This document shows positions 14,048 to 64,000 of a DNA stretch of 64,000 nt, piece by piece. The DNA is taken from positions 140,042 through 204,041 of IMG/VR virus record IMGVR_UViG_3300013233_000235. The stretch is one strand, 5' to 3'. The first letter of the stretch is position 1. Each line of letters begins with the position of its first letter. The notes under the pieces are model-generated. The model was given only the letters and a program-made list of their open reading frames with translations, was not told the origin of the DNA and searched no databases. A program made the translations under genes and the position numbers.

Positions 14048-14060
14048 GGATAAAGGCGCA

Positions 14061-19711: not shown

Positions 19712-19818
19712 AAGTTAGCCCTTCGGGGCTTTCTTTTTTATTTGTTTCCCTATATTCTTAGAACTATATAACTTGTATGAAGAGACACTTTGATCTCTTG
19801 TATAGGAGTTTAGTTATG
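19712..19818 (+). promoter_or_regulatory. Family-A cassette repeat copy 5
   Basis: Conserved architecture; loop CACTTTGA, 3' block GTATAGGAG. Confidence 0.9.
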
Positions 19819-20866: not shown

Positions 20867-21444
20867 GCCAGTCGGAGTGGATGACACCCTACCAATCATT
20901 CCTGATAAGTGTCTCCCCCCAACCCCCCGATGGTGACATTATCTGCATTGATGGGCATCCCCTGCCCAATATAGGGCGTGTCGGCAACGGGTTAACCCTG
21001 GACATATCCGGTGAGCCATGGGTGACGGGTCCCCACCCGCCGTACGTGATGCTCAATGGGGTGCCAGGTGGCATCGCCATCGTATTGGTGTTCCGATGTG
21101 ATGATCTTGGCACGATGGTCATCGTTGATAAAGGCGGCCCGGTTATAATGGGGAGGTTAGTCAGGGAGGTCCCCGCGTGTGGTCCAAATGGCACAATTGT
21201 TTGTGAGCAGCGTGTGTGGTTACACGGCTTGGGGCACACCGACCTACACGGGCAGCTAAAGAAAGCCGTTAAATACACCCGGACGTGGGATGCGATCTGC
21301 ATTAGCACAGCCAACGTCAAGTCTGAGTGGGTTATCACAGCCACCAGGGGTTGGCCCACCAATCCCGACGTAGTGGATAACCCATGGGAGCCAACGTATC
21401 TGTGCCGTTGGGAAGATGCCCACTGGGCATTTGCACGTATGTAA
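20863..21444 (+). CDS. Hypothetical protein, 'DG..P' family
   Basis: CIDGHPLP..GEPWVTGPHPPY..IVCEQRVWLHGLG; start uncertain. Confidence 0.7.
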   Translation: MSQSEWMTPYQSFLISVSPQPPDGDIICIDGHPLPNIGRVGNGLTLDISGEPWVTGPHPPYVMLNGVPGGIAIVLVFRCDDLGTMVIVDKGGPVIMGRLVREVPACGPNGTIVCEQRVWLHGLGHTDLHGQLKKAVKYTRTWDAICISTANVKSEWVITATRGWPTNPDVVDNPWEPTYLCRWEDAHWAFARM

Positions 21445-21446
21445 TT

Positions 21447-21552
21447 AGTTAGCCCTTCGGGGCTTTCTTTTTTATTTGCTTCCCTATATTCTTAAGCCTA
21501 TATAACTTGTATGAAGAGACGCATTGATCTCTTGTATAGGAGTTTAGTTATG
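21447..21552 (+). promoter_or_regulatory. Family-A cassette repeat copy 6
   Basis: Conserved architecture; loop CGCATTGA, 3' block GTATAGGAG. Confidence 0.9.
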
Positions 21553-23481
21553 AGTGAAAGATATATCAGAGATCTGAGCCTTAAGTTACAGAGGTGGACA
21601 GATGCGTATGCAAGTGGCACCCCACTTGTGTCAGATAGTTTATACGATGCCGTCCATAAGGAGTTGGACAAAGCGGTCGGCGGATCGGCTGAGAAGTTCG
21701 TACCGCAGACCCTGACAGTGGCCACCACTGGTAAGCACCGCGTCCCCATGACCACTCTCAAAGATGTTTACACGATTGAGGATATTGGCAGATTCGTGAA
21801 TGGTTTTCCAGAGGGTACCCGCTTTATAGCGGAGCCAAAGATGGATGGGATGGCTATCAGCCTAACATATGAAAACGGCGATCTGGTCAAAGGGTTAACC
21901 CGGGGTGATTATGTTAATGGGGAGCTCTGTACTGAATCCATCAGCTACGTCCCAAGCGTGCCTATAACACTCGGTCTGGATATCGATATGGAGGTTCGGG
22001 GTGAGCTTGTTGTTACCCACGAAAGCTTTACACCAGACATGGGTGTATCGCCACGCAACTTTGCCGCAGGCAGCCTTATGAAGGGGGACCAAGAGCGGAA
22101 CAAGCATCTAACGTTCATCCCATACGCTGTGACAGTGGCGCGCGGTGAATACGGGGAGTTAACAAGTCTGCACGACAAACTCATGTGGCTGGGGACCATC
22201 GGGTTCCAAACCAATCCGGCCAAGATACTGCTGGGCACCCGCGTACAAATCATCGATTGGATGAAGGATATGCATGAAAGTTGTGACCCGCAGGCACGGC
22301 CAGAAGCTTACATGTGCGCGATTGATGGGTTAGTGCTAAAGGTCGATGACTCTGAGCTGTTTGCCGACGCTGGTGGTACCAGCAAGCACCCCCACGGGGC
22401 GATCGCCTTTAAGTACAACTCAGCTAGCGCTGTCACCACGATCGTGGCTGTGGAGGAGTCTATGGGCCGCTTTGGCGAGATAACTCCAGTGGCTATCGTG
22501 GAGCCTGTGACCATCGATGGTAATGTGGTTACCCGTGCCACCCTCCACAACTACGCCAAGGTTCTAAGCAAGGGTGTATTCATTGGTGGGGAATGCGTAC
22601 TGATGCGGGCAGGTGGTGTGATACCGGACCTGGTTGCTATGACGGAGAATGTTGACAAGTTGCCAATCGTATCCCCGCCATCTGTATGCCCAAGCTGTGG
22701 TGCCGCAACAATCGTCACCGCCGACCTTATCAACACCACCTGTAGTAGAGAAGACTGGTCGGAATGTAAGGCGCGTGCGGTGCGTACTGGGGCATACATC
22801 GTGTCTAAGAAGGTGCTAAATATACAGGGGCTTGGTGGAAAGACTATCGAGAAGTTGTATGACCTTGGTGTCAAGTTAACCACCTTGCACCATGTGCTGA
22901 CACTTTCCAAGGATGATCTGGTAAAGGCCGCAGGTAACGCTATGGGGAAAAAGGTATATGACCGCATCCAGTCGGCGGCTGAGATGTCATGCCAAACATT
23001 CATAAAGGCCATGTGCATAAAGGAAATCGGCAACCATGCATCCGTTATATTGTCCGAGCATGTGGGTCACCACCCCCAGGGTTTTCTCGACTTATCGGGG
23101 GAATCTATCGGGCTTATCAATGGTTTAGCCGAAGATGAAGTTGGGCATTTGGTGGAATTCTTTGGCGATACCGCGAGGCAAGCGGCGGCATGGCGTGGTC
23201 ATGATCTGGTGACAGACCCTATGTCGCCTGAAGATGACCCCGCTAATAAAAACGCTGATGAGTTGGTAGCTAGGTTCAGCAACGCTGGATTCGATACGTC
23301 TCACAAGGTGTGTGTAACCGGATCGTTTGAGGGTTGTAACCGCGATGATATTCACAAGGCCCTAAGCAACGCTGGGTTCACACCCACGAAATCAGCCAGT
23401 GCGAATACCGCCCTAATAGCCGGCGATAAACCGTCGGCATCAAAGGTGGATAAATCGGGCGCGATGTTCTGTGCGTTTTAA
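21550..23481 (+). CDS. ligA: NAD-dependent DNA ligase
   Basis: Ia motif AYASGTPLVSDSLYD; EPKMDG; TRGD; EVRGE; PRNFAAGSL; IDGLVLK; AIAFKY; RATLHN; RAGGVIP; C4 Zn finger; HhH; BRCT-like end. Confidence 0.95.
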   Translation: MSERYIRDLSLKLQRWTDAYASGTPLVSDSLYDAVHKELDKAVGGSAEKFVPQTLTVATTGKHRVPMTTLKDVYTIEDIGRFVNGFPEGTRFIAEPKMDGMAISLTYENGDLVKGLTRGDYVNGELCTESISYVPSVPITLGLDIDMEVRGELVVTHESFTPDMGVSPRNFAAGSLMKGDQERNKHLTFIPYAVTVARGEYGELTSLHDKLMWLGTIGFQTNPAKILLGTRVQIIDWMKDMHESCDPQARPEAYMCAIDGLVLKVDDSELFADAGGTSKHPHGAIAFKYNSASAVTTIVAVEESMGRFGEITPVAIVEPVTIDGNVVTRATLHNYAKVLSKGVFIGGECVLMRAGGVIPDLVAMTENVDKLPIVSPPSVCPSCGAATIVTADLINTTCSREDWSECKARAVRTGAYIVSKKVLNIQGLGGKTIEKLYDLGVKLTTLHHVLTLSKDDLVKAAGNAMGKKVYDRIQSAAEMSCQTFIKAMCIKEIGNHASVILSEHVGHHPQGFLDLSGESIGLINGLAEDEVGHLVEFFGDTARQAAAWRGHDLVTDPMSPEDDPANKNADELVARFSNAGFDTSHKVCVTGSFEGCNRDDIHKALSNAGFTPTKSASANTALIAGDKPSASKVDKSGAMFCAF

Positions 23482-33218: not shown

Positions 33219-34937
33219 TTATCCAAGTAAGAAGGCATTGCCGGCATCCGTTAGACCAGTGTCGGACCCTGGGGCCCCCACTATGCCACGTGCACCATCG
33301 CCTGATAAAGATACAGCGGTGCCGAGATAATCAGCGGCTAGAGAGCCTGTGACGCCTAGCTCGACACCGGCCAACCAGGTCCCTGAAACGTCAGCGAATG
33401 TGTACACCAGCCCGGCGTCATTGGCAGAGGAATCCGACATTGGACAACCCACAATAATGGCCAGTCCGTCGCCAGACATCCCCACTGCGTGACCAAACTG
33501 GTCATTTAGAGCAGGGGTGGGTGCTGTAAGAGTGGCCGCTAATGTGGGCACGCCTGTAACCACGTTGAACACATATGCGGCACCGCCACCAGACACAGCG
33601 GAATCATCGCCCTCCGCGCCGATAACCACGCGGTCACCAGCGGCGCTTATGGCCGAACTTATGCCGAACTTATCGTAAGCCGACACACCAGTCGCCGTCA
33701 GGGTGCCAGATGGGCTCCAAGCACCAGATGTGGATGTGTACACAAACCCCGTACCGGAATCAATACCTAAGGTGGCATCAGTGGGTGCTGTTATTACGGC
33801 GGTAACCCCTTGATCGGCTATCGCAACGCTGTAACCAAAGTAACCACCCTGCGACAGCACGGCCGGCACGATGTTGGCGGACTGTACATATGCGCCAGTC
33901 ACATCCGCGGTAAAGACATATACAGTGCCCACGGTTGTCAATAAACCATTACTCTTCGTGGGTGAGCCAATGATGATCTCATTGGTAACCCCTGCGATCG
34001 CAACGCTGTATCCGAACCATCCGATATCCGTGTGGTCTGTGGGTATCAGCTCCTGTGTAACTGCGTAACCTGTGCCAGCATCCGTAATCACGTAAGCTTT
34101 ACCAGCCCCAGCAACTCCGGCCGCATTGACATCGTTACTAGCACCCACCACGATAACACTGCCATCGGCATTGACATCGATAGAGGAGCCAAAATATGCC
34201 GAAGGTGCGGCTGACGGGCTAGTTAACCGGGCAACCTCAACCCATATGTTGGATACGAGTTTTAGTATGAAAACCGCACCACCGCTTGCTGACGTATTGG
34301 AGTCTGTTGGGGCGCCTATTACGGCTACATCACCGCTGTCACTAATAACCACCGCGCTACCATACCCACCCGATGTGGATGCCAAGCTTGGTGGTAGTGT
34401 AGATATAACCCCATTGATTGCCAGTGCATCCACGATGAAGCTGCTAACGGGGCCCCAATTAGAAAGACCCCCCGAAACCGCCTCGTGTTTGATGCGTACG
34501 AAATGTTCGACAGATGGTGCTAGCTGGATACCCGCCACACCCAGATCGTAAACACCGGTATTACCTGCTTGTCTACCACTCGCGTGTACGATGGTGGTAA
34601 AGGCGAGATCTGTGGCGATCTCTATAAACATGGCAGCCATGGTTTCAGACGTAAGATCTGTGGCAATGCCATTGAAAGCGCCACTACGGATAATGGGGCT
34701 CTGGTTTATACTGACGGCGGTGTTGGCCGGGCTAGCTACAACTGGGGCGCCAATGCCGGTAACCACATTACCCTTGATATCATGCCCACCGGCTTTAACG
34801 CCATCATGGATGGTTATCACGGGTGGGTTGCGACCATAGTCAATGATCAACTCATCCCGTATACCGGTTATGTTTGCCATGTTACCGGATATGCACGACT
34901 TCCATAAGAAATCGCCTAATAAAAATCTAGTACTCAT
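33219..34937 (-). CDS. Fibre/adhesin with IHDG..GG N-motif, Fn3-like domain and FG-GAP propeller
   Basis: ITIHDGVKAGGH; seven [FY]GxSVAIS..G..GAP repeats. Confidence 0.8.
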   Translation of the reverse strand: MSTRFLLGDFLWKSCISGNMANITGIRDELIIDYGRNPPVITIHDGVKAGGHDIKGNVVTGIGAPVVASPANTAVSINQSPIIRSGAFNGIATDLTSETMAAMFIEIATDLAFTTIVHASGRQAGNTGVYDLGVAGIQLAPSVEHFVRIKHEAVSGGLSNWGPVSSFIVDALAINGVISTLPPSLASTSGGYGSAVVISDSGDVAVIGAPTDSNTSASGGAVFILKLVSNIWVEVARLTSPSAAPSAYFGSSIDVNADGSVIVVGASNDVNAAGVAGAGKAYVITDAGTGYAVTQELIPTDHTDIGWFGYSVAIAGVTNEIIIGSPTKSNGLLTTVGTVYVFTADVTGAYVQSANIVPAVLSQGGYFGYSVAIADQGVTAVITAPTDATLGIDSGTGFVYTSTSGAWSPSGTLTATGVSAYDKFGISSAISAAGDRVVIGAEGDDSAVSGGGAAYVFNVVTGVPTLAATLTAPTPALNDQFGHAVGMSGDGLAIIVGCPMSDSSANDAGLVYTFADVSGTWLAGVELGVTGSLAADYLGTAVSLSGDGARGIVGAPGSDTGLTDAGNAFLLG

Positions 34938-34942
34938 TATGA

Positions 34943-36598
34943 TTATCCGAGTGCATAAACCGCACCGGCCTCGTTGCCATTTGTACCTTCACCGAAAGCG
35001 CCGACAGCGCCAACTGTACCATCGTTGCCGATAGCCCCGGAGAAGCCATAGTAGTCATAGCTACTGCTATTAGAAGCTGTTAGCTCAGACCCAGACTGTG
35101 CCCATGCGCCACTATCCTTAGTGAACACGTAGGCTGACCCACGGTAACTGGCGCTAGCATAGGACCCAATCAAGATTGTGCTGCCATCCCCACTTATATT
35201 AACGCTGCGTCCAAAGTTATCACCGGCGGCGATCTCACTCGGCACTATTCGGATAGCCGGGCCCCAAGTGTTAGTGGCCAAGTCTTGCTCAAAGATGTAC
35301 GCACCACCAGCATTGCTGCCATTGATGTCTTCCCCATAAGCCCCAACCACGGCAACTGAACCATCCGCTGAGATATCCACCGAGAACCCAAAGTAACCGT
35401 ATAGCTCGGGGTTAGGGGTGCTAAGCGTGGCCACCTCCGGCCAGTTGCTACCCTGGTTCTCGAAGATGGTGACCTCACCACCATCGCCAACTAAGGTGTC
35501 AGACAGATAGGATCCGGCTATGATGAAGTTCGTGTCACCCGATATGCTTACAGACGTGCCAAGATGATCACCAGTGGTATGGTTCCCAGGATTCAACTCC
35601 GTGCCGCTATCCCAATTGCCAACACCGCCTTCGAATACCCATACGTTGCCAGACGATGTACCATTAACATCATCAAGGTCGGCACCGATTACACAGAAGA
35701 TTCCGTCATCGCTCAGTCTGACATCGATGCCAAATTGATCACTATCGTTACCCGTACCGGCGAGCAGGTCCTGTTCGGCCCAGCCACCATTATCCTCGAA
35801 GATTATAACAGCACCATCATCATTACCACCGTCATCAAACAGGGGGGCACCTACTGCACAGATCGTACCATCGAAGTTGAGGGCCACACTGTAGCCAAAG
35901 TGGTCGACTGGGTTGGAGTTCTTAGGATCACTTTCCAGGATATCGTTCCACACCCATTTGCCGGCAACCGACTTGTAAATATCTACAGCCCCTTCATCCG
36001 TTTGGTTATTATCCCCTAGGTAGGAGCCCACGGCCATGGTGCTATTGTCACCCGAGATTGCGATGGAGTGCCCTGACCTATCCCCGCCAGCGGGGTTGGC
36101 TGGGTATACAATTTCGATCTCTTTTGATAACGCGGCAGCGACTGTCGTAAATGACGTGACAGCAGACCAAGCCGAGATGGGGGCTAGATTACTTTCGAAA
36201 CGCACACGGATGTAATATGCCAACCCTTGGGTGAGTACCACCCCGGCCTGTGCCATATCGTGGCTGTTAAGATCGGTCAACCCCACAGTGCTATACACCG
36301 TGGTCGCAAAGGTCGGGTCCAGACTTAGCTCATAGTAACTCAAGATGTGTGCGCCGTCGCCCACCATGGTGCCCGTTGTGACAATTGGCGCAACAACGAT
36401 TCCACTCGACCCATCTAAAGGGGAGGTGATGATAGGGGCCGCAATGGTGAATCCTACGGCCACAATGCCGTTACCACCCACGGTTGACCCATCTTGGATG
36501 TGCATGGGTCCGCGACCTTCCCGAATGGTTAGGCACCCGGTGGGGCCCACGTAAGTGGACTCCGAGGCTGCGGTCATGGTTTTTATTTGTACACGCAT
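34943..36598 (-). CDS. Fibre/adhesin with FG-GAP propeller (acidic loops)
   Basis: MHIQDGSTVGG; FGYSVALNFDGTICAVGAPLFDDGGNDDG repeats. Confidence 0.8.
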   Translation of the reverse strand: MRVQIKTMTAASESTYVGPTGCLTIREGRGPMHIQDGSTVGGNGIVAVGFTIAAPIITSPLDGSSGIVVAPIVTTGTMVGDGAHILSYYELSLDPTFATTVYSTVGLTDLNSHDMAQAGVVLTQGLAYYIRVRFESNLAPISAWSAVTSFTTVAAALSKEIEIVYPANPAGGDRSGHSIAISGDNSTMAVGSYLGDNNQTDEGAVDIYKSVAGKWVWNDILESDPKNSNPVDHFGYSVALNFDGTICAVGAPLFDDGGNDDGAVIIFEDNGGWAEQDLLAGTGNDSDQFGIDVRLSDDGIFCVIGADLDDVNGTSSGNVWVFEGGVGNWDSGTELNPGNHTTGDHLGTSVSISGDTNFIIAGSYLSDTLVGDGGEVTIFENQGSNWPEVATLSTPNPELYGYFGFSVDISADGSVAVVGAYGEDINGSNAGGAYIFEQDLATNTWGPAIRIVPSEIAAGDNFGRSVNISGDGSTILIGSYASASYRGSAYVFTKDSGAWAQSGSELTASNSSSYDYYGFSGAIGNDGTVGAVGAFGEGTNGNEAGAVYALG

Positions 36599-37315: not shown

Positions 37316-39001
37316 CTACCCTAAAATTAATGCGCTACCAGCGCTGGCTAACAATGTGCTATCAGATGGCGCGCCGGCTATGACGTAATCACCATCTTTG
37401 GAACACCCAATGCTGCTTCCAAGCAACCCTCCGGCACCCGTGGTGGAACTCACAATGGGTGGTAATGCCGTCCACGCCCCGCTGACCAATTTATAGATGG
37501 CTACGGCGCCGGTGCTTGCCCCTGACACGGCGTTAGTTACATAAGGGGTGCCTACAAACAATAACCCCACATCGTGGGCTACGGCCATTGCATACTGCCC
37601 ACCAGAGACATCCACAGCAGTAAGAGCCGCGATGGTTGCTGTCCACACACCCGGCGCCGATTCAGCGTAGATGTGAATGGTGCGCGTACCTGGCTCCGAT
37701 ACGAATAAGTGGCCCGAACCCTTATCGAACTCCACAGTGTCACCGTAAAAGGCGTCAAGTGTGGGGGTGGCCGAAAATAGTTCGGCTTCTGTCCACAGTG
37801 TTCCGCTCTTTGTGTACACGAATGCCCGGCCATAGATCGATGTCAACGCCCCCTGGTTGGTACCTACAGCGATAGCGGTGCCATCAAAGTTGATACTAAC
37901 CGAATTACCATACCGCTGATAAACAGTGGATGTGGTGGGGGTGAGTTCCGCCGACCATACCCACAGGCCTGTATTGTTTTTAACGTACACCAGTGCGGCA
38001 CCAACCAGGTTATAATCGATGCGCCCTAAGACCATGGTGTTACCATCGCCAGAGATATCGATAGACATACCAAGTAGGCCCGATGGGATCGCTGTTGGTG
38101 ATGTGATGGTCTGTTTAAGTACGAAGAATCCAGAACTGTCTGGGCTGTAAACGTATACCGCCCCAGCATTGGTAATCGTCGCACCGGTGGTGTCATCCAA
38201 GTATGGTGCGCTTACAATCAGATCTCCCGACGGGGTGAATGTAATCGCCGTGCCGTAATAGTCATACGCCACCGGGTTGGGGTCTGTAAGTTTCTGTGTC
38301 TCCACGTACTGCCCGTTTACCATGGCGCTGATGTATACAGACCCTGCATCAGCCAGACCGTTGGCATCTTCTCGACTTGCGCTAACGGCTAACCGTTGTT
38401 TATCCGGGGATATCGCTACGGCCGACCCAAGGCCATCCCCCGCTGCTATATCACTGCTCTTGAATACCTGTAACTCCAAGCTGGGTGTGGAGGCCGCGAC
38501 AGTGAAGCTTATCGGCGTAGACCATTCGCTGACACCACCAGTTTTAGAGGTGTGTTTTACACGGGCGTATATAACACCCACTGGTAGAGTTGCGCCAACT
38601 TCTAGCAGATTGATACTCGTTAGATTGACGCTATCTTCCCCTGAGAAGTACGTACTGGTTAAAAAGGTGCTATCTGTACTGATCTCCCAGATGGCCCCGG
38701 CTTGCGTGTCTGCGCTGCGATCCTCTTTAATGCCATTGAACTGACTGGTCATGAGCAATGGGCTAGGCAGGACGCCTGTAAGGCCGTTCAATGGGGATGT
38801 GATCACAGGGGTGGCCACCCCATTGATACCGAAGGACCCGAGTGGGTATCCACCGGGGGTGCTGCCATCACCGATACGTAGTCTCGGCAATGTGTCTCTC
38901 CAATCGATGAATAGTTCTCGATCAAGCTGGACGCTATTAAACATCAGATTGTCTTGGTAGCTTTTTAAAGGTACCGGTGTTGTAAGTAGTAATGTAGGCA
39001 T
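37316..39001 (-). CDS. Fibre/adhesin with FG-GAP propeller
   Basis: LRIGDGSTPGGY; LGSAVAISPD, YGNSVSINFDG, VIAGAP. Confidence 0.8.
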   Translation of the reverse strand: MPTLLLTTPVPLKSYQDNLMFNSVQLDRELFIDWRDTLPRLRIGDGSTPGGYPLGSFGINGVATPVITSPLNGLTGVLPSPLLMTSQFNGIKEDRSADTQAGAIWEISTDSTFLTSTYFSGEDSVNLTSINLLEVGATLPVGVIYARVKHTSKTGGVSEWSTPISFTVAASTPSLELQVFKSSDIAAGDGLGSAVAISPDKQRLAVSASREDANGLADAGSVYISAMVNGQYVETQKLTDPNPVAYDYYGTAITFTPSGDLIVSAPYLDDTTGATITNAGAVYVYSPDSSGFFVLKQTITSPTAIPSGLLGMSIDISGDGNTMVLGRIDYNLVGAALVYVKNNTGLWVWSAELTPTTSTVYQRYGNSVSINFDGTAIAVGTNQGALTSIYGRAFVYTKSGTLWTEAELFSATPTLDAFYGDTVEFDKGSGHLFVSEPGTRTIHIYAESAPGVWTATIAALTAVDVSGGQYAMAVAHDVGLLFVGTPYVTNAVSGASTGAVAIYKLVSGAWTALPPIVSSTTGAGGLLGSSIGCSKDGDYVIAGAPSDSTLLASAGSALILG

Positions 39002-49962: not shown

Positions 49963-50256
49963 ATGCGACTACCCTTGCTTATCACCGCATCCCTTCTAAG
50001 TGGGTGCATGAACATCACCTATAACCGCCCACCACCTGCGCCAACCCCTGTGCCTGAAAAGAAGTGTGTGGTACAGGAATCCGATTATATTAAACTGGTA
50101 GGTCTTTCAGCCGGCTCTTTACCAGAAGCCCTTGATGATCCTACTGATGCCGCCTATGAGGCTTACGCCACTGCTTTAATAACCGTACTGTTGACGTATC
50201 GTCAATCCGCATCCATCTTGATCAAAGGACTCACCGCCCGTGCCGAATGTAATTGA
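49963..50256 (+). CDS. Lipoprotein (o-spanin-like)
   Basis: Lipobox LLSG-C followed by a Pro-rich linker. Confidence 0.6.
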   Translation: MRLPLLITASLLSGCMNITYNRPPPAPTPVPEKKCVVQESDYIKLVGLSAGSLPEALDDPTDAAYEAYATALITVLLTYRQSASILIKGLTARAECN

Positions 50257-51640
50257 GTCTAACGATGATGGCGTGCCAGGTATACTTGTGGACTTTGATG
50301 TTCCGGCAACTGTGGCTAAGCATGTGGATATATTTACCGATGGCGGGGCAAAGCCTTCCCATGGTTCCGCAGGATGGGGTTTCTGGGCAGAGGACTCAGA
50401 TGGTACAACTTATAGTGCGCACGGGTACTTGGGTAGTATGTCTACCAACAACCGTGCTGAGCTACGTGCATTTAAGCGCGCACTACAGATGACGATACAC
50501 ATGGGATGGAAAAATATTACCATCTTGTCCGACTCAGAGTATGTAATCAAGGGTACTAAATGGGCCAGAGATAAATGGCGTAATAATAAGTGGCTTAAAC
50601 CCAATGGTGATGCGGTGCCTAACAAAGACTATTGGGTGTCCATACTCGATCTAGAGGATATACTCAAGGTTGAGGGCGTCAAGTGCGCTGTTAAGAAGGT
50701 AAAGGGCCACAGTGGTAAAGATGATGGTAATAATAAAGCCGACATGCTGGCCACACTGGGTAGGCTAGATGGCGAAGGTGGTGATTTCACTGAGTCAATG
50801 GTTGTGGCTAAGACCGGCGATGCACCGGTCAAAGTGAAGTCAGCTAAGTTCAATAAGATGTTGTCAGGCAAGAGGTTGTTCTTTATGGTCAACTCACCCG
50901 CACCAGTGGCCCCTGAAGGACGTACGGCGTATTACCAGACATCTTATCAGGATGAGGTAAAAGATGCCCCAGGCGAAGATCTAGGTGTGGACTTCGGTAG
51001 CACCACTTACTCTGTGCTACACTCTGTTGAGCCCATTGCGGAAGTGGAAGCAGTGTTGGAATATCAGCATGCGGTCACTCCAGATGATTTTGTTAGCCCA
51101 GTCATGATGTACCTAAGTAATGTGACCAAACCAAACGTGTGGCATGAGTTGGGTAACTACGGTAACAACCGTCTGAAGCACAAGCGTTTATCCGCTCGCA
51201 TGGTCGATGGCTTACCAATCACACGCTTTCTACGACCCCCGCGTAATGCGTATAGAGCACTAGACAAAATGGCTGACTTAGATCAGATCCTACATACGGT
51301 GTTATCAAGCGAGGATAACAACTACGAGATTACAGATATAACAGAAGAGCTGTACACAACGTCCGCCAAAGGTGTGCGTAAGATCAGTGATCTATTTAAG
51401 GAGCCTAGGCTACCTGTCAGCACCACATATGGCGGTAAGGACATAAAACTCAACCTAGTGGTCGGCATAGACCTACCTCCCAAGAACAACATGAGTGCCA
51501 TAGGTAAAGCCACCGGCGACCTAGAAGTACTACTTGTTAAATACGAGTCATACGACGATGGTTTTAGATACTGCGTTGTCATCAAATCCGAACAAGGCGA
51601 AGCAATATATTCCAGTCCCGCTAACTTAGAGGTGGCATAA
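50240..51640 (+). CDS. rnhA: Ribonuclease HI with phiKZ-type C-terminal extension
   Basis: IFTDGG, TNNRAEL, SDSEYV, VKGHSG, NNKADMLA. Confidence 0.92.
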   Translation: MPNVIESNDDGVPGILVDFDVPATVAKHVDIFTDGGAKPSHGSAGWGFWAEDSDGTTYSAHGYLGSMSTNNRAELRAFKRALQMTIHMGWKNITILSDSEYVIKGTKWARDKWRNNKWLKPNGDAVPNKDYWVSILDLEDILKVEGVKCAVKKVKGHSGKDDGNNKADMLATLGRLDGEGGDFTESMVVAKTGDAPVKVKSAKFNKMLSGKRLFFMVNSPAPVAPEGRTAYYQTSYQDEVKDAPGEDLGVDFGSTTYSVLHSVEPIAEVEAVLEYQHAVTPDDFVSPVMMYLSNVTKPNVWHELGNYGNNRLKHKRLSARMVDGLPITRFLRPPRNAYRALDKMADLDQILHTVLSSEDNNYEITDITEELYTTSAKGVRKISDLFKEPRLPVSTTYGGKDIKLNLVVGIDLPPKNNMSAIGKATGDLEVLLVKYESYDDGFRYCVVIKSEQGEAIYSSPANLEVA

Positions 51641-58611: not shown

Positions 58612-58719
58612 AGTCAGCCCCTTCGGGGGCTTTCTTTTTTATTTGTTTCCCTATATTCTTAAGCCTATATAACTTGTATGAAGAGACGCATTGATCTCTT
58701 ACTTTGGAGTTTAGTTATG
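58611..58719 (+). promoter_or_regulatory. Family-A cassette repeat copy 9
   Basis: Loop CGCATTGA, 3' block ACTTTGGAG. Confidence 0.9.
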
Positions 58720-60207
58720 AGTAAGTATCCAGATGTGCGCAAGGCCGAAGTGGTGTCCAAACTGCTAAGTCATGCTTGTTCCAGCTATTACGCTGGCACC
58801 CCTATTCTATCGGATTATGAGTATGACATGATTCGAAACGACGAGGGCGATTGGCTACGTACAACCGGTGCGGTTGCCGTAATGTACACCTCTATCCCCA
58901 TCCGCACCAAGGTTGACAATCTGGGGTGGTCATATGTGCCGCAACCGGTGGAGTGGTGCCCAGAGCCCGATATGATTAATCGCAACTACCGGTGGTGCGC
59001 TTTGTATGCGCACATACCCATACCTGTGGGTAAGATTGTCATAGCGAGATGGGTGGGTGGCAAGTTGGTGGACATCATCACCCCGCCCATTAACGGCTGG
59101 GTTACCGACCTATCACACCTCATCGGTAAATGCGACCTACCCATGGATGTTACAAAATCCTGGGGTGATGCGGATCTACACGTGTTGGGCACGCTGGCAC
59201 CGAGCGACGCCGTTACGTATAAGTTCCGTCGCATACCAGTGCACATCGGGGACCCCCTATCCGACGTCCCCGAAGTCACCCGGGCCATTGCTGCCACCAT
59301 CGGCTTTGATACGATCCAGACCACGATAATAGATGTGGATGATCGTAAAGATTGGGCGTTATCTGAGGGAGATTTGCTGTATGCCACGCAGCCCGTACCA
59401 TTCGAGGGTAATGGTTTTTTACCGGGGCTGGTGCGTGTGGCGGGGTATTCCGCCACACACTGGGGTAACGCCAAGGTCGTAGACGGTAGTGCGGTGTCAC
59501 AGGTTAATAGTCTGATAAACACACGGGGGCAGTTTATCAAGCCCGTTACCCAAGTTCAGGTGGTGTGCCCGGCATGTGGCGGTGAGGTAAGAAGCGTAGA
59601 CCTAGTCAGCGAGTTTGTCTCGGATGTCACCATAGATGGTGGCATCCTACATCAGTGTTTGCGGGCTGAAAGTGACAGCGAGTGCTGCCCTGGCCAGTTG
59701 GCCGCTGCCATCATGGCGTTACCATTTGCGTATCGCCCTGAGCATCGGGATGAAAATATCCACGGCGTCATATTACGTGGTGACCACAATACTGTGGCGG
59801 GGTATTCTGATGGGGACTTGACGGTGGATTACAATAGTTGGCGACATCTGTTGCAATCACCGCCGCCAAATTTGGTTGCCACTCACCGGGATTTCTGGGC
59901 GTGCTTGGAGCAGATGGTTAAAGAGGGTTTATCTAAGCGGGCCTACGCAGACGCCATGGTCAAAATGTATACCGGTGTAACATTCACACCCCTGGCCGAC
60001 ATGGACATACGCCGCATTGGTTCAGCTACACCCAAGCTGCTAGTGGCTGCGTTTGAAAAGGATCCACTCTTGGCTGAGTTTATGGATGTCAGTGAGGACA
60101 CGTTGTCCGTCGGGGAAGACTACAAAGGCACTGTTGGCATAGACCTCACCACAGCTAGTGGTATACAGGAGTTTCACGCATACGCCATTAAGAACCTATT
60201 GAGTTAA
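58717..60207 (+). CDS. Catalytically dead NAD-ligase-derived protein 1
   Basis: YYAGTPILSDYEYD (Ia); IARWVGGKLV; HVLGT; IGFDT; CPACGG..QC..CCPG; no KxDG. Confidence 0.8.
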   Translation: MSKYPDVRKAEVVSKLLSHACSSYYAGTPILSDYEYDMIRNDEGDWLRTTGAVAVMYTSIPIRTKVDNLGWSYVPQPVEWCPEPDMINRNYRWCALYAHIPIPVGKIVIARWVGGKLVDIITPPINGWVTDLSHLIGKCDLPMDVTKSWGDADLHVLGTLAPSDAVTYKFRRIPVHIGDPLSDVPEVTRAIAATIGFDTIQTTIIDVDDRKDWALSEGDLLYATQPVPFEGNGFLPGLVRVAGYSATHWGNAKVVDGSAVSQVNSLINTRGQFIKPVTQVQVVCPACGGEVRSVDLVSEFVSDVTIDGGILHQCLRAESDSECCPGQLAAAIMALPFAYRPEHRDENIHGVILRGDHNTVAGYSDGDLTVDYNSWRHLLQSPPPNLVATHRDFWACLEQMVKEGLSKRAYADAMVKMYTGVTFTPLADMDIRRIGSATPKLLVAAFEKDPLLAEFMDVSEDTLSVGEDYKGTVGIDLTTASGIQEFHAYAIKNLLS

Positions 60208-60273
60208 ACGCGGCGTGTGTTGCTACACCGCATCCCCATCCTGGGGGTGTGTACTACATAAAGGGTATATTAC

Positions 60274-60726
60274 ATGACTAAAGTTATTGCGGTAATGCTG
60301 TTGTTATTTACATCACAGGTGTTAGCTGAAGAAATTGGTTCGGTTAACACGGCGTTTAAATTGTTTGGCTCTAGTGACCGCATCGTTATCGAAGCCTTTG
60401 ATGACCCCAAAGTGGCTGGTATCAGCTGCCACCTAAGTCGGGCTGTCAAGGGTGGGTTAAGCGGGGCCATTGGGTTTGCCACCGATTCTTCGGATGCGTC
60501 TATAGCCTGTAGACAGGTCGGCCCAATCGTCGTTAAGGGTAAGCTTAAGGACGGTGAGTCGGTATTCTCTAAAAGCACATCCTTTCTATTCAAGAAGATG
60601 CGGGTGGTGCGTTTCTTAGATACCACACGTAACGTATTCATATACCTGACATATAGCGATAAACTGATCGATGGTAGTCCAAAGAATTCCATCTCATCAG
60701 TACCCATCGTTGTATGGAATAAGTGA
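60274..60726 (+). CDS. creA: CreA-family periplasmic protein
   Basis: Signal peptide; EEIGSVNTAFK..IEAFDDP..SDASIACRQVGPI..YSDKLIDGSPKNSIS. Confidence 0.9.
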   Translation: MTKVIAVMLLLFTSQVLAEEIGSVNTAFKLFGSSDRIVIEAFDDPKVAGISCHLSRAVKGGLSGAIGFATDSSDASIACRQVGPIVVKGKLKDGESVFSKSTSFLFKKMRVVRFLDTTRNVFIYLTYSDKLIDGSPKNSISSVPIVVWNK

Positions 60727-60728
60727 TT

Positions 60729-60837
60729 AGTTAGCCCTTCGGGGCTTTCTTTTTTATTTGTTTCGCGCATGTATCAGAACTATATAACTTGTATGAAGAG
60801 ACACTTTGATCTCTTATAGCGAAAGGGTTTAATTATG
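60729..60837 (+). promoter_or_regulatory. Family-A cassette repeat copy 10
   Basis: Loop CACTTTGA; divergent SD AAGGG. Confidence 0.9.
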
Positions 60838-62151
60838 AATGATTCAAATAGTAGCATGTATACCGACGCCTTCATCCGCCGGTCTTTAAAGAAAGCCCAC
60901 CTTGCGCACAGCCATGGTGAGACATCTGAGATGGCCGATGATCAGTATGACCAACTGATGTTTGTGTTGCACCAACGGGTCGGATCATTCCAACCGCTGC
61001 GACAGGCTTACCCAACACACGCCCCTGTAGAGGGTACGCCCGTCGAGCGCATAAAACGGGTGATGGGTATGTACCGGTTCACACTACCGGATGATACCCG
61101 GGTATATGCCCACTGGGGTGAGCAGATTATCGCAGCTGTTTACACGGGGGGTGTGTTAACTGCGGTGGGGGCTGAATCCAAGTGGTCCCAGGACCCCGGT
61201 GAGCTGGCAGAGGTTGGCATCCCCCCGGCTATCCCCCACATCGGCGATGCCGTTGTATACGGGTGGTCCAATAAAGTCACCGGCCGCTTCGAAGCCGTTT
61301 GTTTAAAGGCTGCCCAGTCACCCAGTCTGGAAGCGTTAGGATTCGACACCCCTCCCGCAGTGAATCCATTACTGGTATCATTACCAGCCATCAGTGTGGT
61401 CGGCGACAGGTTCCACACAACCTCCTACCATATAAACGATATCCTGGATTTTCCACCCACGATGGTATTCCCAGATGGTACCCCGGTCGATGCCCATAAC
61501 ACCGAGCTTGATTTCGACGGAACCTTCAAGTCAGATTCCCCGGATACCCACTCATGCCCAGCATGTGGTGGGGATGTTACTAAGCTTGATGGTAATGGTG
61601 TATACCAGTGCATCGTGGCAGCGGCCGGTTTACCGGGTGAGTGCCCCGGTCCGATGACGGCCATGATGAGTCTCGGTTCAGAGCTAGCCAAACTTTGCAG
61701 ATATACCCCAGACATGCCGGTGGGTTATACATTTGGGGATATGGCTCTGGAGTTTGATTTACCATTGATGGCGCTACAAGACTGGTTGCAGCGCATGCTG
61801 TTGATACACGGTACGGAGGATAACCACATCCCATACCGCACATATGCGGAAACTATGGCGGCCATCGCTGACAAAGATATGGTTAGCCGTATCGAGATGT
61901 ATCTGGGTGATATCCGGGTTATAGACATCTCTCCGGATAAGGTTATCCGGTTATCCAGCACCCTCACGCGGGGGGTTCAGCGCCTTGTTAACAACGCACT
62001 GCTGTCGTCAACTGCGTATGACCTGCTAATCCCACATGGGGATGCTGGTCCCGCAAATCTCGATGTGGATGATTTGCGGGACCATCCCGTCATTCTAGCG
62101 TTGCTGGAAGAGGCGCAAGATGCTGAAGCACGCCGCGCTGTTAATCTATAA
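60835..62151 (+). CDS. Catalytically dead NAD-ligase-derived protein 2
   Basis: MADDQYDQL; TRVYAHWGEQIIAAVYTGG; LGFDTP; CPACGG..YQC..ECPG. Confidence 0.8.
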   Translation: MNDSNSSMYTDAFIRRSLKKAHLAHSHGETSEMADDQYDQLMFVLHQRVGSFQPLRQAYPTHAPVEGTPVERIKRVMGMYRFTLPDDTRVYAHWGEQIIAAVYTGGVLTAVGAESKWSQDPGELAEVGIPPAIPHIGDAVVYGWSNKVTGRFEAVCLKAAQSPSLEALGFDTPPAVNPLLVSLPAISVVGDRFHTTSYHINDILDFPPTMVFPDGTPVDAHNTELDFDGTFKSDSPDTHSCPACGGDVTKLDGNGVYQCIVAAAGLPGECPGPMTAMMSLGSELAKLCRYTPDMPVGYTFGDMALEFDLPLMALQDWLQRMLLIHGTEDNHIPYRTYAETMAAIADKDMVSRIEMYLGDIRVIDISPDKVIRLSSTLTRGVQRLVNNALLSSTAYDLLIPHGDAGPANLDVDDLRDHPVILALLEEAQDAEARRAVNL

Positions 62152-62156
62152 GTAAC

Positions 62157-62265
62157 AAGTCAGCCCCTTCGGGGGCTTTCTTTTTTATTTGTTTCCATAC
62201 ATTCTCAAGACTATATAACTTGTATGAAGAGACACTTTGATCTCTTATAGTGGAGTTTAGTTATG
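62157..62265 (+). promoter_or_regulatory. Family-A cassette repeat copy 11
   Basis: Loop CACTTTGA, 3' block ATAGTGGAG. Confidence 0.9.
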
Positions 62266-63030
62266 AGTAAAGATACAGTGTGCAGTCTTACAGGTGATCC
62301 TGCTGACTCGCTGGTTACTTCCGATACCCCGCCTAGCCACTTTGCATCCCGCGATAGGCTGCGTAATTTTGTGTCTGTGCTGTGTGCCACGGGTGTTGTA
62401 AGGTTAAATGTTGGGGCTCTTTATTACCATGCGGATATTCCGTCCGACTTCGTCGAGCTGCTAATGCCGCACACCAGGGCTGGTGGCAAAGTTAAGGTAA
62501 AGCCTGATTTGGTAAATATGTCAACCGATATACGCATGTTAAGGCGCGATTCGGGGTCATCGTCACATGGAGTCATGGTGGCACCCATATCGACCACTGG
62601 TGCAGAGTTGCACGTGGCCGTATGCATGGAGGATGATGCAGGGTCTATTACAACCGAATTGTCTGTCAAAGGGTCCACCCTACTAGAGATAGCCTTTGAT
62701 GTAACATTTGGGGTAGGCCACCTATGGTTGATTACGGATGCTGGGGCGTGGCTGTACAGATGTGGGACCGACAGCGGTGGTAAGTTGCGAGCACCCGTTC
62801 CTTCCGAGCCGCGTGGGGGTGGTGGCCCATTGGGTGGCCGGGTGGTTAACATGGTCTATAGTGCGGATGTGAATACTGCGGGTGTGTTGGTATATTCTGC
62901 GGCCAATATCGGCATCGGGGTACAGGGAAAGACTTATGAGGTGACCATGTCTCCGGAAGGTGATGGCCAGGTCGGCGCCGGCGTGACCATGGGTGAAATG
63001 CTGGCTAATATATCGGGCAGCGAGGGGTGA
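62263..63030 (+). CDS. Hypothetical protein, paralog of 12693-13430
   Basis: RLRNFV, LWLITDAGAWL, GGPLGG..MVYSADV, YEVTMSP. Confidence 0.8.
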   Translation: MSKDTVCSLTGDPADSLVTSDTPPSHFASRDRLRNFVSVLCATGVVRLNVGALYYHADIPSDFVELLMPHTRAGGKVKVKPDLVNMSTDIRMLRRDSGSSSHGVMVAPISTTGAELHVAVCMEDDAGSITTELSVKGSTLLEIAFDVTFGVGHLWLITDAGAWLYRCGTDSGGKLRAPVPSEPRGGGGPLGGRVVNMVYSADVNTAGVLVYSAANIGIGVQGKTYEVTMSPEGDGQVGAGVTMGEMLANISGSEG

Positions 63031-63071
63031 TGCGTCCGCACTTTGCGGTTTAAGGTGCACCCCCTCCTATA

Positions 63072-63179
63072 AAGTTAGCCCCTTCGGGGCTTTCTTTTTT
63101 ATTTGCTTCCATACATTCTTAGAACTATATAACTACTATGAAGAGACACTTTGATCTCTTATATAGGAGTTTAGTTATG
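63072..63179 (+). promoter_or_regulatory. Family-A cassette repeat copy 12
   Basis: Loop CACTTTGA, 3' block ATATAGGAG. Confidence 0.9.
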
Positions 63180-64000
63180 AGTAAAGATACAGCGTGTAAT
63201 CCCGTAGATGATTACGCACGTACCGCCCTGATAAAGGCCCATTACGAGTATGACTGCAACATACCCACCGGTTTATCAGATTGGCAGTACGATCGGATGA
63301 TGGCCAAGTTATATCCACAGGGTACGCCCTTTACACCCGGTATTAGCGTGTACCGTGCCATACAGCATACCCCCAGGAATACCCACGTAGATCGAATACC
63401 ACGGGTATTGGGGGTGCGCGGTAGTATGCACAATACCCCACATACGCGTGTGTATGCCTACAGTGGCGAGACGATTATTGCCTTACAATACATGGGTGGG
63501 GAACTTGTGGGAACGTGTGCGGAGTCCGATTATATCCCTGATTCGGCCATAGATCCGATTGATGCGCCCTCTGATATACCCGCTGTCACCGCAATCGTGG
63601 TGTACGGGTGGGTCGAGGAGAGTGGCGGTGGGTTTAGGGCGATCTGTGTGGCCAATGGTGATACGTGGTCCCTAAAGGAGCTGGGGTTTACCACGCCGGA
63701 TGATGCCACAGACCTATACGAGTCGTACAAGCCCACAATCGCGGTGACGTCGGATGTTTTCAGCACGGCTGTTTGCCACTTACCAGATGATTCCCCACAC
63801 ACGATATGTCGGGAGTTCCTACCTGACGGTACCCCCGTGGATGCCCATAACACCATGCTGGATTTTGACGGTAAGTACACCAGTAATCGTGTGGATGATT
63901 ATGCCTGCCCAGCCTGTGGCGGTAAAGTTGAAAGCACTGAAGAGGATGATGTGTACTACTGTATAAACGCTATGCGGGGCGTTGCTGGGGGTTGCCCCGG
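63177..64000 (+). CDS. Catalytically dead NAD-ligase-derived protein 3 (runs off window; missing from ORF track)
   Basis: Manual translation: MSKDT..LSDWQYDRM..TRVYAYSGETIIALQYMGG..VVYGW..LGFTTP..PDGTPVDAHNTMLDFDG..CPACGG..YYC..GCP. Confidence 0.85.
   Translation, partial: MSKDTACNPVDDYARTALIKAHYEYDCNIPTGLSDWQYDRMMAKLYPQGTPFTPGISVYRAIQHTPRNTHVDRIPRVLGVRGSMHNTPHTRVYAYSGETIIALQYMGGELVGTCAESDYIPDSAIDPIDAPSDIPAVTAIVVYGWVEESGGGFRAICVANGDTWSLKELGFTTPDDATDLYESYKPTIAVTSDVFSTAVCHLPDDSPHTICREFLPDGTPVDAHNTMLDFDGKYTSNRVDDYACPACGGKVESTEEDDVYYCINAMRGVAGGCP

What the first reader, a model, noticed from the sequence alone, without database searches (positions are those of the whole stretch)
58717..64000. 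Expanded family of catalytically dead NAD+-ligase paralogs, each leading its own early cassette
Seen: 58717, 60835 and 63177 align in order to the intact LigA at 21550. Ia motif: SDSLYD vs SDYEYD / ADDQYD / SDWQYD. Motif I: TRFIAEPKMDGMAISLTYENG vs TRVYAHWGEQIIAAVYTGG / TRVYAYSGETIIALQYMGG, with the catalytic Lys gone. EVRGE becomes HVLGT / VVYGW, IGFQT becomes IGFDT / LGFDT / LGFTT, and the C4 Zn finger is intact. The OB domain appears largely deleted and BRCT is absent in the two complete copies. The ORFs are long, open and mutually diverged, so they do not look like decaying pseudogenes. Established: subdomain Ia binds the NMN part of NAD+ through its Tyr/Asp residues. Inference: these are repurposed pseudo-enzymes, such as nucleotide/NAD-derived signal binders, nick or end protectors, or decoys against host defence or repair.
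Basis: partly seen in the sequence, partly recalled or inferred. Interest (0 to 1): 0.85.

Follow-up and report, generated by a model that had tools for sequence, protein, structure and literature searches.

The report
Dead NAD-ligase copies in a jumbo phage
A distant phiKZ-like jumbo phage from a metagenome carries three diverged, selection-maintained genes that descend from NAD+-dependent DNA ligase but have lost every catalytic residue, each behind its own copy of the phage's repeated early-type promoter; what they bind or do is untested.

Summary
The quoted motifs are all in the sequence at the stated coordinates. The three ORFs (58717-60207, 60835-62151, 63177 to the contig end) form one family: p2 and p3 are 41% identical (E 9e-53), and p1 is linked to them only around the Zn finger.

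Descent from LigA is statistically supported for three modules:
- Domain Ia: hhalign E 1.6e-6.
- The Cys4 zinc finger: all four Cys invariant.
- The HhH domain: E 1e-5 to 5e-8.

A profile of the three, searched against 1.84 billion proteins, found only itself, one repeat-protein artefact and one true LigA. The middle region is only moderately supported as a shrunken nucleotidyltransferase domain (E 0.011; 0 of 60 column shuffles reach the score). No OB or BRCT domain is detectable.

The motif I Lys and Asp, motif III Glu, and motif IV and V Lys are lost or gapped, and no Lys is invariant, so these proteins are not ligases. Synonymous sites between p2 and p3 are saturated (pS 0.79, pN 0.41), so the genes are under purifying selection.

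Each gene follows a terminator, a CTATATAACT promoter and a conserved leader, an element present 14 times in the contig. The family has no relatives anywhere. It is not closest to the phage's own LigA. Function is inferred only: ligand or DNA binding without catalysis.

The parts
58616..58631 (+). Intrinsic terminator closing the preceding unit
   Evidence: GC stem plus T run; conserved in all 9 aligned junctions
58665..58716 (+). Early-type promoter motif CTATATAACT, conserved leader with an AAGAGA/TCTCTT hairpin, and GGAG ribosome-binding site, for cassette 1
   Evidence: 11 copies in the window, all on the + strand, 0.1 expected by chance. 14 copies of the longer element in the 204-kb contig.
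58717..60207 (+). Paralog p1, 496 aa: Ia-like (aa 9-48), degenerate middle region, Cys4 Zn finger with an insertion (aa 281-326), HhH-like C-terminal region (aa 327-496)
60274..60726 (+). CreA homologue with a signal-peptide-like N-terminus, second gene of cassette 1
   Evidence: Pfam PF05981, E 1.9e-54. Up to 73% identical to CreA of marine proteobacteria. No promoter element between it and p1.
60733..60746 (+). Intrinsic terminator of cassette 1
60780..60834 (+). Promoter, leader and ribosome-binding site of cassette 2
60835..62151 (+). Paralog p2, 438 aa: Ia-like (aa 11-50), middle region (aa 51-237), Zn finger C241/C244/C259/C270, HhH-like region (aa 273-438)
62162..62177 (+). Intrinsic terminator of cassette 2
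62211..63030 (+). Cassette 3: promoter and leader plus an unrelated 255-aa ORF (62263-63030). This ORF is a paralog of 12654-13430.
   Evidence: 28% identity over 229 aa, E 2e-21
63077..63091 (+). Intrinsic terminator of cassette 3
63125..63176 (+). Promoter, leader and ribosome-binding site of cassette 4
63177..64000 (+). Paralog p3: the first 274 aa only, cut by the end of the contig. It ends just after the fourth Cys.
   Evidence: (41% identical to p2, E 9e-53)
21498..23481 (+). The same promoter and leader, followed by the intact but divergent NAD+-dependent DNA ligase (CDS 21550-23481)

Best explanation
The three genes are a lineage-specific family of non-catalytic proteins descended from an NAD+-dependent DNA ligase.

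What they keep:
- The N-terminal Ia helical module, including the Asp-x-x-Tyr-Asp residues that hold the nicotinamide nucleotide in LigA.
- A shrunken, residue-stripped remnant of the nucleotidyltransferase sheet.
- The Cys4 zinc finger.
- A degenerate helix-hairpin-helix region.

What they have lost: the OB and BRCT domains and every residue needed for lysine adenylylation and nick sealing.

Each is transcribed as its own short unit from the phage's repeated AT-rich promoter. By analogy with phiKZ-type phages, this promoter is read by the injected virion RNA polymerase at the very start of infection (inferred).

The most likely mode of action is binding without chemistry. The retained Ia pocket would hold NMN, NAD+ or a related nicotinamide nucleotide, and the Zn/HhH scaffold would hold DNA or a protein partner. 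The proteins would then sequester, sense or compete rather than ligate, plausibly in the contest over NAD+ or DNA repair early in infection.

Shown: homology of three modules, loss of catalytic residues, purifying selection, and the cassette architecture. Inferred: early timing, ligand identity and biological role.
For: Family:
- p2 and p3 are 41% identical, E 9e-53.
- p1 is linked to p2 and p3 at E 6e-5 and 1e-4.

LigA descent:
- Profile against PDB: the top three hits are E. coli LigA through colinear Ia and Zn stretches, E 0.005.
- Against 1.84 billion representatives, the only true hit beyond self is a bona fide LigA, E 5.6e-4.
- hhalign: Ia E 1.6e-6; Zn plus HhH E 1.1e-5 and 5.3e-8.
- The Ia sub-HMM hits all 51 LigAs tested, up to 21.6 bits.
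- NTase remnant: E 0.011, 0 of 60 shuffles. The alignment runs colinearly through motif IIIa, the LGF helix and the motif IV 'DG'.

Dead as a ligase:
- Motif I K and D, the R118 equivalent, motif III E, R169, motif IV K and motif V K are replaced or gapped.
- No invariant Lys in the family.

Ia residues: the equivalents of E. coli D32, Y35 and D36 are invariant. Ia with the NTase domain forms the NAD+ pocket, with the nicotinamide stacked on tyrosines (PMC7470946).

Selection: pS 0.79 (saturated) against pN 0.41; 66 of 110 identical residues use different codons; no stops in 496, 438 and 274 codons.

Expression signals: terminator, promoter, leader and SD before each gene.

Phage type and promoter class: the phage has a phiKZ gp149-type virion RNAP subunit. 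Conserved ~10-nt AT-rich motifs mark early promoters in such phages (PMC7598289).
Against: - No independent structural confirmation. AF2 on the family alone gave pLDDT 35. The second model and its Foldseek hits to LigA used an alignment that contained LigAs, so they are circular, and the TM-scores are only 0.13-0.20.
- The middle-region alignment is unstable between methods.
- Single-sequence searches find nothing.
- The AMP half of the NAD+ pocket is destroyed, so tight NAD+ binding is not assured.
- The HhH-like region is acidic (net -8 and -11, against -1 in the phage LigA) and its hairpin Gly residues are partly lost in p2. This argues against strong DNA binding.
- No relatives exist, so conservation across phages cannot be examined.
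- Early timing rests on analogy only.
Confidence: 0.55

Rival explanations
1. DNA nick or end binders that do not seal. They would occupy nicks, gaps or ends through the remaining ligase scaffold, either protecting phage DNA or blocking the host's LigA and repair on host DNA (dominant-negative host shut-off).
For: The Zn finger and HhH region are the part with the strongest profile match. [quoted passage not shown]
Against: OB is absent, and the NPRNAAAGSLRQ DNA-contact loop is deleted. The proteins and their HhH-like parts are acidic. The p2 hairpin Gly is replaced by Asp. This reading does not explain why the NMN-contact residues of Ia, which do not touch DNA, are the best-kept residues.
Confidence: 0.2
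2. Non-catalytic partner subunits of the phage's active LigA or another enzyme. They would act as regulators or scaffolds, in the way dead paralogs activate deoxyhypusine synthase or phage ligases work as heterodimers.
For: The intact LigA is driven by the same promoter class, so co-expression is likely. Heterodimeric NAD+-ligases of T5-like phage PR1 are in the PDB (9hu3, 9i5i). There is a precedent for dead-paralog activators (PMC3663545).
Against: The family resembles canonical LigAs more than the phage's own LigA, so there is no sign of co-evolution. The phage LigA has all six modules and needs no complement. Three diverged copies are more than a simple partner role needs.
Confidence: 0.1
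3. The resemblance to LigA is convergent or due to chance. On this view this is an orphan family with a generic zinc ribbon and a helical N-terminus.
For: Pairwise BLASTP to LigA is weak. Ribosomal L37Ae zinc ribbons also appear at E 0.6-1.4. There are no library hits. The independent AF2 model failed.
Against: Three separate modules match in LigA order. LigA is the top hit in both PDB and the 1.84-billion-protein library. HhH alignments extend about 150 columns beyond the ribbon. The Ia sub-profile alone hits all 51 LigAs tested.
Confidence: 0.07
4. They are still enzymes: a nucleotidyltransferase or other activity using a relocated nucleophile or a different substrate.
For: The motif IV 'DG' is invariant. 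p1 has a Lys directly after the motif I Gly.
Against: That Lys is not conserved in p2 or p3, and no Lys is invariant. Motif III Glu, the motif IV and V Lys and the Arg residues are all gone.
Confidence: 0.05
5. Decaying pseudogenes of a ligase that are no longer expressed as proteins.
For: Catalytic residues are lost.
Against: Open frames of 496 and 438 codons. Synonymous sites are saturated while 41% amino-acid identity is kept. An intact promoter, SD and terminator precede each gene. GC3 is like that of the other genes.
Confidence: 0.03

Closest known systems
Bacterial and phage NAD+-dependent DNA ligase LigA (E. coli LigA, PDB 2owo, 5tt5, 4glx)
   Same: Same module order: Ia, then NTase-like, then Cys4 Zn finger, then HhH. 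The Ia D-x-x-Y-D residues, the four Cys, the motif IV 'DG' and several structural Gly and Pro are kept.
   Different: No motif I Lys or Asp, no motif III Glu, no motif IV or V Lys, no OB domain, no BRCT domain. The region between Ia and Zn is 185-230 aa instead of about 335. Below every curated family threshold.
E. coli LigB-type reduced LigA paralogs (from my own knowledge; NCBIfam NF005987 is the model)
   Same: A second, reduced LigA-family gene in a genome that also holds a full LigA, and it lacks BRCT.
   Different: LigB keeps the catalytic lysine and is an active, if weak, ligase. Here the chemistry is gone, and the NCBIfam scan at E<=1 listed no LigB hit for any paralog, whereas the phage LigA hit LigB at 2.1e-37.
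Engineered NAD+ sensors built on a bacterial LigA adenylation domain (PDB 8jyd)
   Same: Use of a LigA-derived module as a non-sealing binder of NAD+; this is an analogy for the proposed mode of action.
   Different: The sensors are engineered and (from my own knowledge) keep the full NAD+ pocket. The phage proteins have lost the AMP-binding half of that pocket.
Early transcription units of phiKZ-type (RNAP-encoding) jumbo phages
   Same: A highly conserved ~10-nt AT-rich motif sits upstream of many short same-strand units. The phage encodes a homologue of the phiKZ gp149 virion RNAP subunit.
   Different: The motif sequence and the conserved hairpin leader are specific to this phage. Timing has not been measured.

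Membership tests
NAD+-dependent DNA ligase (LigA) family | Motif I KxDG with the adenylylated lysine | tested here: not met
   The Lys and Asp columns are a gap or Pro, His or Tyr in all three. No Lys is invariant in the family.
NAD+-dependent DNA ligase (LigA) family | NTase motifs III (Glu), IV (Lys) and V (Lys), and the Arg residues of TRGDG and NPRN | tested here: not met
   E152 becomes T or W, R118 becomes P or E, R169 is gapped, and K264 is gapped or becomes D or S. Motif V is gapped in p2 and only ambiguously aligned in p1 and p3.
NAD+-dependent DNA ligase (LigA) family | NTase fold of the central domain | tested here: inconclusive
   hhalign E 0.011-0.035; shuffles reach the score in 0 of 60 and 4 of 200 runs. 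The independent AF2 model failed. The second model is circular.
NAD+-dependent DNA ligase (LigA) family | Domain Ia with NMN-contact residues (E. coli Y22, H23, D32, Y35, D36) | tested here: met
   Ia profile match E 1.6e-6. The D32, Y35 and D36 equivalents are invariant. The Y22 equivalent is kept only in p3, and H23 is not kept.
NAD+-dependent DNA ligase (LigA) family | OB-fold domain between NTase and Zn finger | tested here: not met
   No significant match to a 51-sequence OB profile (13 of 60 and 35 of 60 shuffles reach the score). MAFFT hints of a C-terminal OB remnant are unconfirmed.
NAD+-dependent DNA ligase (LigA) family | Cys4 zinc finger | tested here: met
   The four Cys columns are invariant across 3 paralogs plus 51 LigAs. 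PDB stretch 242-263 matches LigA 405-426.
NAD+-dependent DNA ligase (LigA) family | HhH domain | tested here: met
   hhalign covers 150-155 columns through the HhH region, E 1.1e-5 and 5.3e-8. The hairpins are partly degenerate and the region is acidic.
NAD+-dependent DNA ligase (LigA) family | BRCT domain | tested here: not met
   p1 and p2 end after the HhH-like region, and there is no BRCT hit.
NAD+-dependent DNA ligase (LigA) family | Curated family thresholds (Pfam PF01653, PF03120, PF03119; NCBIfam LigA) | tested here: not met
   No hit passes. The best is NCBIfam LigA, E 0.28, on the p3 Zn finger.
NAD+-dependent DNA ligase (LigA) family | Adenylylation and nick-sealing activity | not testable with these tools
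   Needs purified protein.
phiKZ-type early (virion-RNAP) transcription units | Conserved AT-rich ~10-nt motif upstream of short same-strand units, in a phage encoding multisubunit RNAPs | tested here: met
   CTATATAACT occurs 11 times in the window, all on the + strand, with 0.1 expected. gp149 homologue. Definition from PMC7598289.
phiKZ-type early (virion-RNAP) transcription units | Transcription within the first minutes of infection by the virion RNAP | not testable with these tools
   The phage is uncultured, so there are no expression data.
Known anti-defence or defence protein families | Sequence match to a described family | tested here: not met
   No PHROG, PADLOC, Pfam or NCBIfam match. 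No precedent in the literature searches.

The most novel reading that the evidence does not exclude
A jumbo phage has turned the NAD+-specificity module of DNA ligase into a set of early-expressed, non-catalytic nicotinamide-nucleotide binders. These would sequester or sense NAD+, NMN or NAD-derived molecules to blunt NAD+-centred host immunity, or to steer the NAD+ economy before the phage nucleus forms. That would be a new class of anti-defence protein derived from a replication enzyme.
Probability: 0.15. Interest if true: 0.8.

Novelty: new variant of a known kind. Interest (0 to 1): 0.5.

Why it matters
LigA is one of the most uniform enzyme families known; its domain pattern is highly conserved across species (PMC7470946). 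I found no report of catalytically dead derivatives, in phages or bacteria, in the searchable literature.

This case shows that the ligase scaffold can be stripped of chemistry and of the OB and BRCT domains while selection keeps the Ia nicotinamide-nucleotide residues and the zinc finger. It therefore points to a binding function that could be tested directly.

If that function concerns NAD+ or repair during the first minutes of a nucleus-forming phage infection, it would add a new type of player to phage-host conflict.

The limits are real. The family exists in one uncultured metagenomic contig, the host is unknown, and no relatives are available for comparison.

Tried and rejected
1. Megablast of the region and tblastn of p2 against 50,697 phage genomes: no match.
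2. Word-indexed search of 5.8 billion proteins with p1 and p2: self only. dN/dS across relatives is therefore impossible. I used the p2/p3 pair instead; dS is saturated, so only a bound is available.
3. AF2 with the three-paralog alignment: pLDDT 35, unusable.
4. AF2 of p1 with a LigA-merged alignment, followed by Foldseek: this returns LigA, but it is circular and has low TM-scores. I do not count it as evidence for the fold.
5. Looking for the missing end of p3 at the other contig end: L007 is unrelated and does not overlap.
6. Looking for further copies near the other promoter elements (L002, L003, L007, L008): none.
7. ORF 62263-63030, which lies between p2 and p3, as a fourth member: rejected. 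hhalign E 0.23; it belongs with 12654-13430.
8. The idea that the copies are recent duplicates of the phage LigA: rejected, because the phage LigA ranks 47th of 52 LigAs against the family profile.
9. The BLASTP hit 21511 against 58678 (44% over 55 aa) is inflated by the shared untranslated leader, which reads as 'MKRRIDLL...'. I ignored it.
10. The leader hairpin: folding energy is not better than shuffles (z -0.58), so it is supported only by sequence conservation.

Full report
**Where the window comes from**

The window is the last 64 kb of a 204,041-bp metagenomic contig (JGI Ga0172420_10000008, also held as IMGVR_UViG_3300013233_000235). The contig ends exactly at window position 64000, so the third gene of the finding is cut by the assembly. 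Nothing in 50,697 phage genomes is similar at the DNA level.

The gene content shows a distant phiKZ-type jumbo phage:
- A 224-aa protein at 55945-56619 matches PHROG 3233 (E 3.9e-65) and phiKZ gp149, annotated 'RNA polymerase beta subunit' in the RefSeq phiKZ record. Identity is about 39%.
- phiKZ-type virion proteins, a baseplate protein, a UvsX-like recombinase and an RNase H are also present.

**The observation**

The ORF at 21550-23481 is a genuine NAD+-dependent ligase:
- Pfam adenylation domain 1.2e-37 and OB 9e-19.
- NCBIfam LigA 5e-101.
- All near-invariant catalytic residues are present.
- It is itself divergent, at most 33% identical to anything in 5.8 billion proteins.

The three ORFs of the finding form one family:
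- p2 (60835-62151) and p3 (63177 to the end) are 41% identical over 269 residues, E 9e-53.
- p1 (58717-60207) is tied to them only around the zinc finger, E 6e-5 and 1e-4.

**Is the family derived from LigA?**

Pairwise BLASTP is weak (best E 0.018 for the Ia segment). Single-sequence library scans find nothing. Profile methods do find it:
- A profile of the three proteins searched against all PDB sequences gives E. coli LigA as its three best hits (E 0.005). The hits run through two colinear stretches: Ia (profile 13-47 against LigA 10-44) and the Zn finger (242-263 against 405-426).
- The same profile, read against 1.84 billion representative proteins, returns four proteins: the two complete paralogs, a repeat-rich RHS/FG-GAP protein that I regard as an artefact, and a canonical 707-aa LigA at E 5.6e-4.
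- Profile-profile comparison aligns about 150 columns from the Zn finger through the HhH domain: E 5.3e-8 against that LigA and E 1.1e-5 against a 26-sequence LigA alignment.
- The Ia part alone gives probability 90%, E 1.6e-6.
- An Ia-only HMM hits every one of 51 LigAs tested.
- In alignments with 51 LigAs, the four Cys columns are invariant in all 54 sequences.

I take descent of the Ia, Zn and HhH modules from a LigA as established at the level sequence statistics allow.

**The middle region**

This is the weak point. There are 185-230 residues between Ia and the zinc finger, against about 335 for NTase plus OB in E. coli LigA (domain limits from PMC4797296).

Evidence that it is an NTase remnant:
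- The three-paralog profile against LigA NTase plus OB gives E 0.035. Four of 200 column-shuffled controls reach that score.
- The cleaner p2+p3 profile against a 51-sequence NTase profile gives E 0.011, and none of 60 shuffles reach it (about 4.6 sd above their mean).
- That alignment runs from motif IIIa, through the 'L..LGF' helix, to the 'DG' of motif IV.
- A second, weaker alignment covers the motif I strand, 'Y.nG.L' and motif III.
- Against an OB profile nothing exceeds the shuffles.

Evidence that the alignment is not secure:
- MAFFT alignments and a plain HMM place some segments elsewhere. p1 'AVTYKF' falls under motif V, and one HMM hit lies across the OB domain.
- Individual motif equivalences such as IGFQT/IGFDT therefore cannot be relied on.

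Structure prediction did not settle it:
- With the family alone, AlphaFold gave mean pLDDT 35.
- With an alignment that also contained LigAs, it was confident only for Ia, residues 101-160 and the Zn finger of p1.
- Foldseek then returned LigA adenylation domains. This is circular, and the TM-scores are 0.13-0.20.

**Catalytic state**

Whichever alignment is used, the residues that define ligase chemistry are gone:
- The motif I Lys and Asp are gapped, or replaced by Pro, His or Tyr.
- The Arg of TRGDG becomes Pro or Glu.
- The motif III Glu becomes Thr or Trp.
- The NPRN Arg is gapped.
- The motif IV Lys is gapped, or replaced by Asp or Ser.
- Motif V is missing or only ambiguously aligned.
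- No lysine is invariant anywhere in the family, which argues against a relocated nucleophile shared by the three.

What is kept is informative:
- The equivalents of E. coli D32, Y35 and D36 in Ia are invariant in all three copies.
- Only about 15% of aligned columns are invariant in this family, so the chance that three named columns are all invariant is roughly 0.003 (my rough estimate).
- In LigA, Ia and the NTase domain together form the NAD+ pocket, with the nicotinamide stacked on a pair of tyrosines (PMC7470946).

**Not pseudogenes**

- The frames are open for 496, 438 and 274 codons.
- Between p2 and p3 the proportion of synonymous differences is 0.79, which is saturated. The non-synonymous proportion is 0.41.
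- 66 of 110 identical residues use different codons.
- GC3 matches that of the phage LigA.

This is the signature of long-term purifying selection. A numerical dN/dS cannot be given because dS is saturated.

**Cassette architecture**

Each paralog is preceded by the same composite element:
- A GC-rich stem with a T run.
- Then TTTATTTGTTTCC.
- Then the invariant CTATATAACT.
- Then a conserved leader, GTATGAAGAGAC..TTGATCTCTT.
- Then GGAG and the ATG.

The scan finds + strand terminators at 58616, 60733, 62162 and 63077, exactly at the unit boundaries.

CTATATAACT occurs 11 times in the window, always on the + strand, against 0.1 expected. The longer element occurs 14 times in the whole contig.

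The units are:
- p1 plus a CreA homologue.
- p2 alone.
- An unrelated 255-aa ORF.
- p3.

The intact LigA has the same promoter.

In jumbo phages that encode their own multisubunit RNA polymerases, a phage-specific, highly conserved AT-rich motif of about 10 nt marks the early promoters read by the virion enzyme (PMC7598289). Calling these units early is therefore a reasonable inference, not an observation.

The leader creates a spurious in-frame extension ('MKRRIDLL...SLVMS') in four ORFs. This inflates one BLASTP hit between LigA and p1.

**Origin**

The family profile scores canonical bacterial LigAs at 12-35 bits, but the phage's own LigA at only 1.8 bits, ranking 47th of 52. The copies are therefore not recent duplicates of the gene at 21550. 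Either they split from it before it diverged, or they came from a separate LigA. Calling them 'paralogs of 21550' goes beyond the evidence.

No relatives exist in the phage genome collection, in 5.8 billion clustered proteins or in 1.84 billion representatives. None lie near the other promoter copies of the contig either.

**Function**

Nothing here tests function.

The pattern of retention is: the Ia nicotinamide-nucleotide residues, the zinc finger and the motif IV 'DG' are best kept; the AMP pocket, the DNA-contact loop, OB and BRCT are lost. This points to a binding protein rather than an enzyme.

Binding of a nicotinamide nucleotide by Ia is the most specific prediction I can make. DNA binding through the HhH-like region is possible, mainly for p1. 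It is weakened by acidity (net -8 and -11, against -1 in the phage LigA and a mean of -2.4 in 26 LigAs) and by loss of a hairpin Gly in p2.

Rival readings are listed with their tests: nick or end binder or dominant-negative blocker, partner subunit of the ligase, chance resemblance, residual enzyme, and pseudogene.

**Comparison with what is known**

Active phage ligases have been linked to counter-defence: ORF55 against Avs (10.1101/2025.06.06.658234) and a PhiKMV ligase. Jumbo-phage surveys describe NAD+-ligases and stand-alone ligase DNA-binding domains (PMC7824862). I found no description of catalytically dead LigA derivatives.

The family fails the membership test for LigA on the catalytic motifs, OB, BRCT and every curated threshold, while meeting it for Ia, the Zn finger and HhH. 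It is best filed as a new, non-catalytic variant derived from a known family.

**Verdict**

- The NTase-remnant claim is moderately supported.
- The paralogy to the resident LigA is doubtful.
- The biological role is open.

Interest is moderate. This is an unusual fate for a very conservative enzyme and makes a testable prediction. It is, however, a three-gene orphan family in a single uncultured phage, without structural confirmation.

Noticed in passing
window 60274-60726 (+): A host-like CreA gene (PF05981, E 1.9e-54) with a signal-peptide-like N-terminus sits as the second gene of the first cassette. It is up to 73% identical to CreA of marine Alphaproteobacteria, Magnetococcales and Oceanospirillales, which hints at a marine proteobacterial host and a recently captured periplasmic protein that is probably expressed early.
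   Followed up: partly
window 13914, 15770, 19777, 21511, 23562, 58678, 60793, 62224, 63138 (+): The conserved untranslated leader contains an ATG in frame with several downstream genes. Mechanical ORF calls therefore gain a false 13-residue extension ('MKRRIDLL..SLVMS'), and unrelated genes appear similar at their N-termini.
   Followed up: yes
window 58674-58681 and the equivalent position in every copy of the element: Just downstream of CTATATAACT the element reads TGTATG. It thus contains TATG, the motif that overlaps the start site of phiKZ late promoters (PMC7598289). If transcription starts there, every transcript would begin with the AAGAGA/TCTCTT hairpin. The hairpin's energy is not better than shuffles (z -0.58).
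   Followed up: partly
window 62263-63030 and 12654-13430 (+): The ORF between p2 and p3 is a diverged paralog (28% identity over 229 aa, E 2e-21) of another gene that also follows a CTATATAACT motif (12641). Neither matches any family in Pfam; the 62263 ORF also has no PHROG, NCBIfam or PADLOC match (12654 was scanned against Pfam only).
   Followed up: partly
window 19816-20403 / 20824-21444; 16266-16967 / 17680-18348 / 9793-10440: Further diverged paralog pairs and triplets lie among the promoter-led units. Tandem duplication followed by divergence seems to be a general habit of this phage's putative early regions.
   Followed up: no
window 33219-34937, 34943-36598, 37316-39001 (-): Three consecutive paralogous proteins of about 560 aa carry FG-GAP repeats (PF14312, E down to 1e-54). 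They lie next to tail-fibre-like genes and may be alternative receptor-binding proteins.
   Followed up: no
window 21550-23481 (+): The phage's functional LigA is unusually divergent: at most 33% identical to any of 5.8 billion proteins, and below the NCBIfam equivalog cut-off (339 against 369 bits). Pfam does not detect its Zn finger, although the four Cys are present.
   Followed up: partly
window 13989-14690 and 16940-17680 (+): Two proteins with Cro/C1-type HTH domains lie in the promoter-led region, which is unexpected for a phiKZ-type lytic phage.
   Followed up: no
window 50240-51640 (+): A 466-aa protein has an N-terminal RNase H domain (E 1.6e-24, with an overlapping weaker RVT_3 hit) and about 290 further residues that match nothing.
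   Followed up: no
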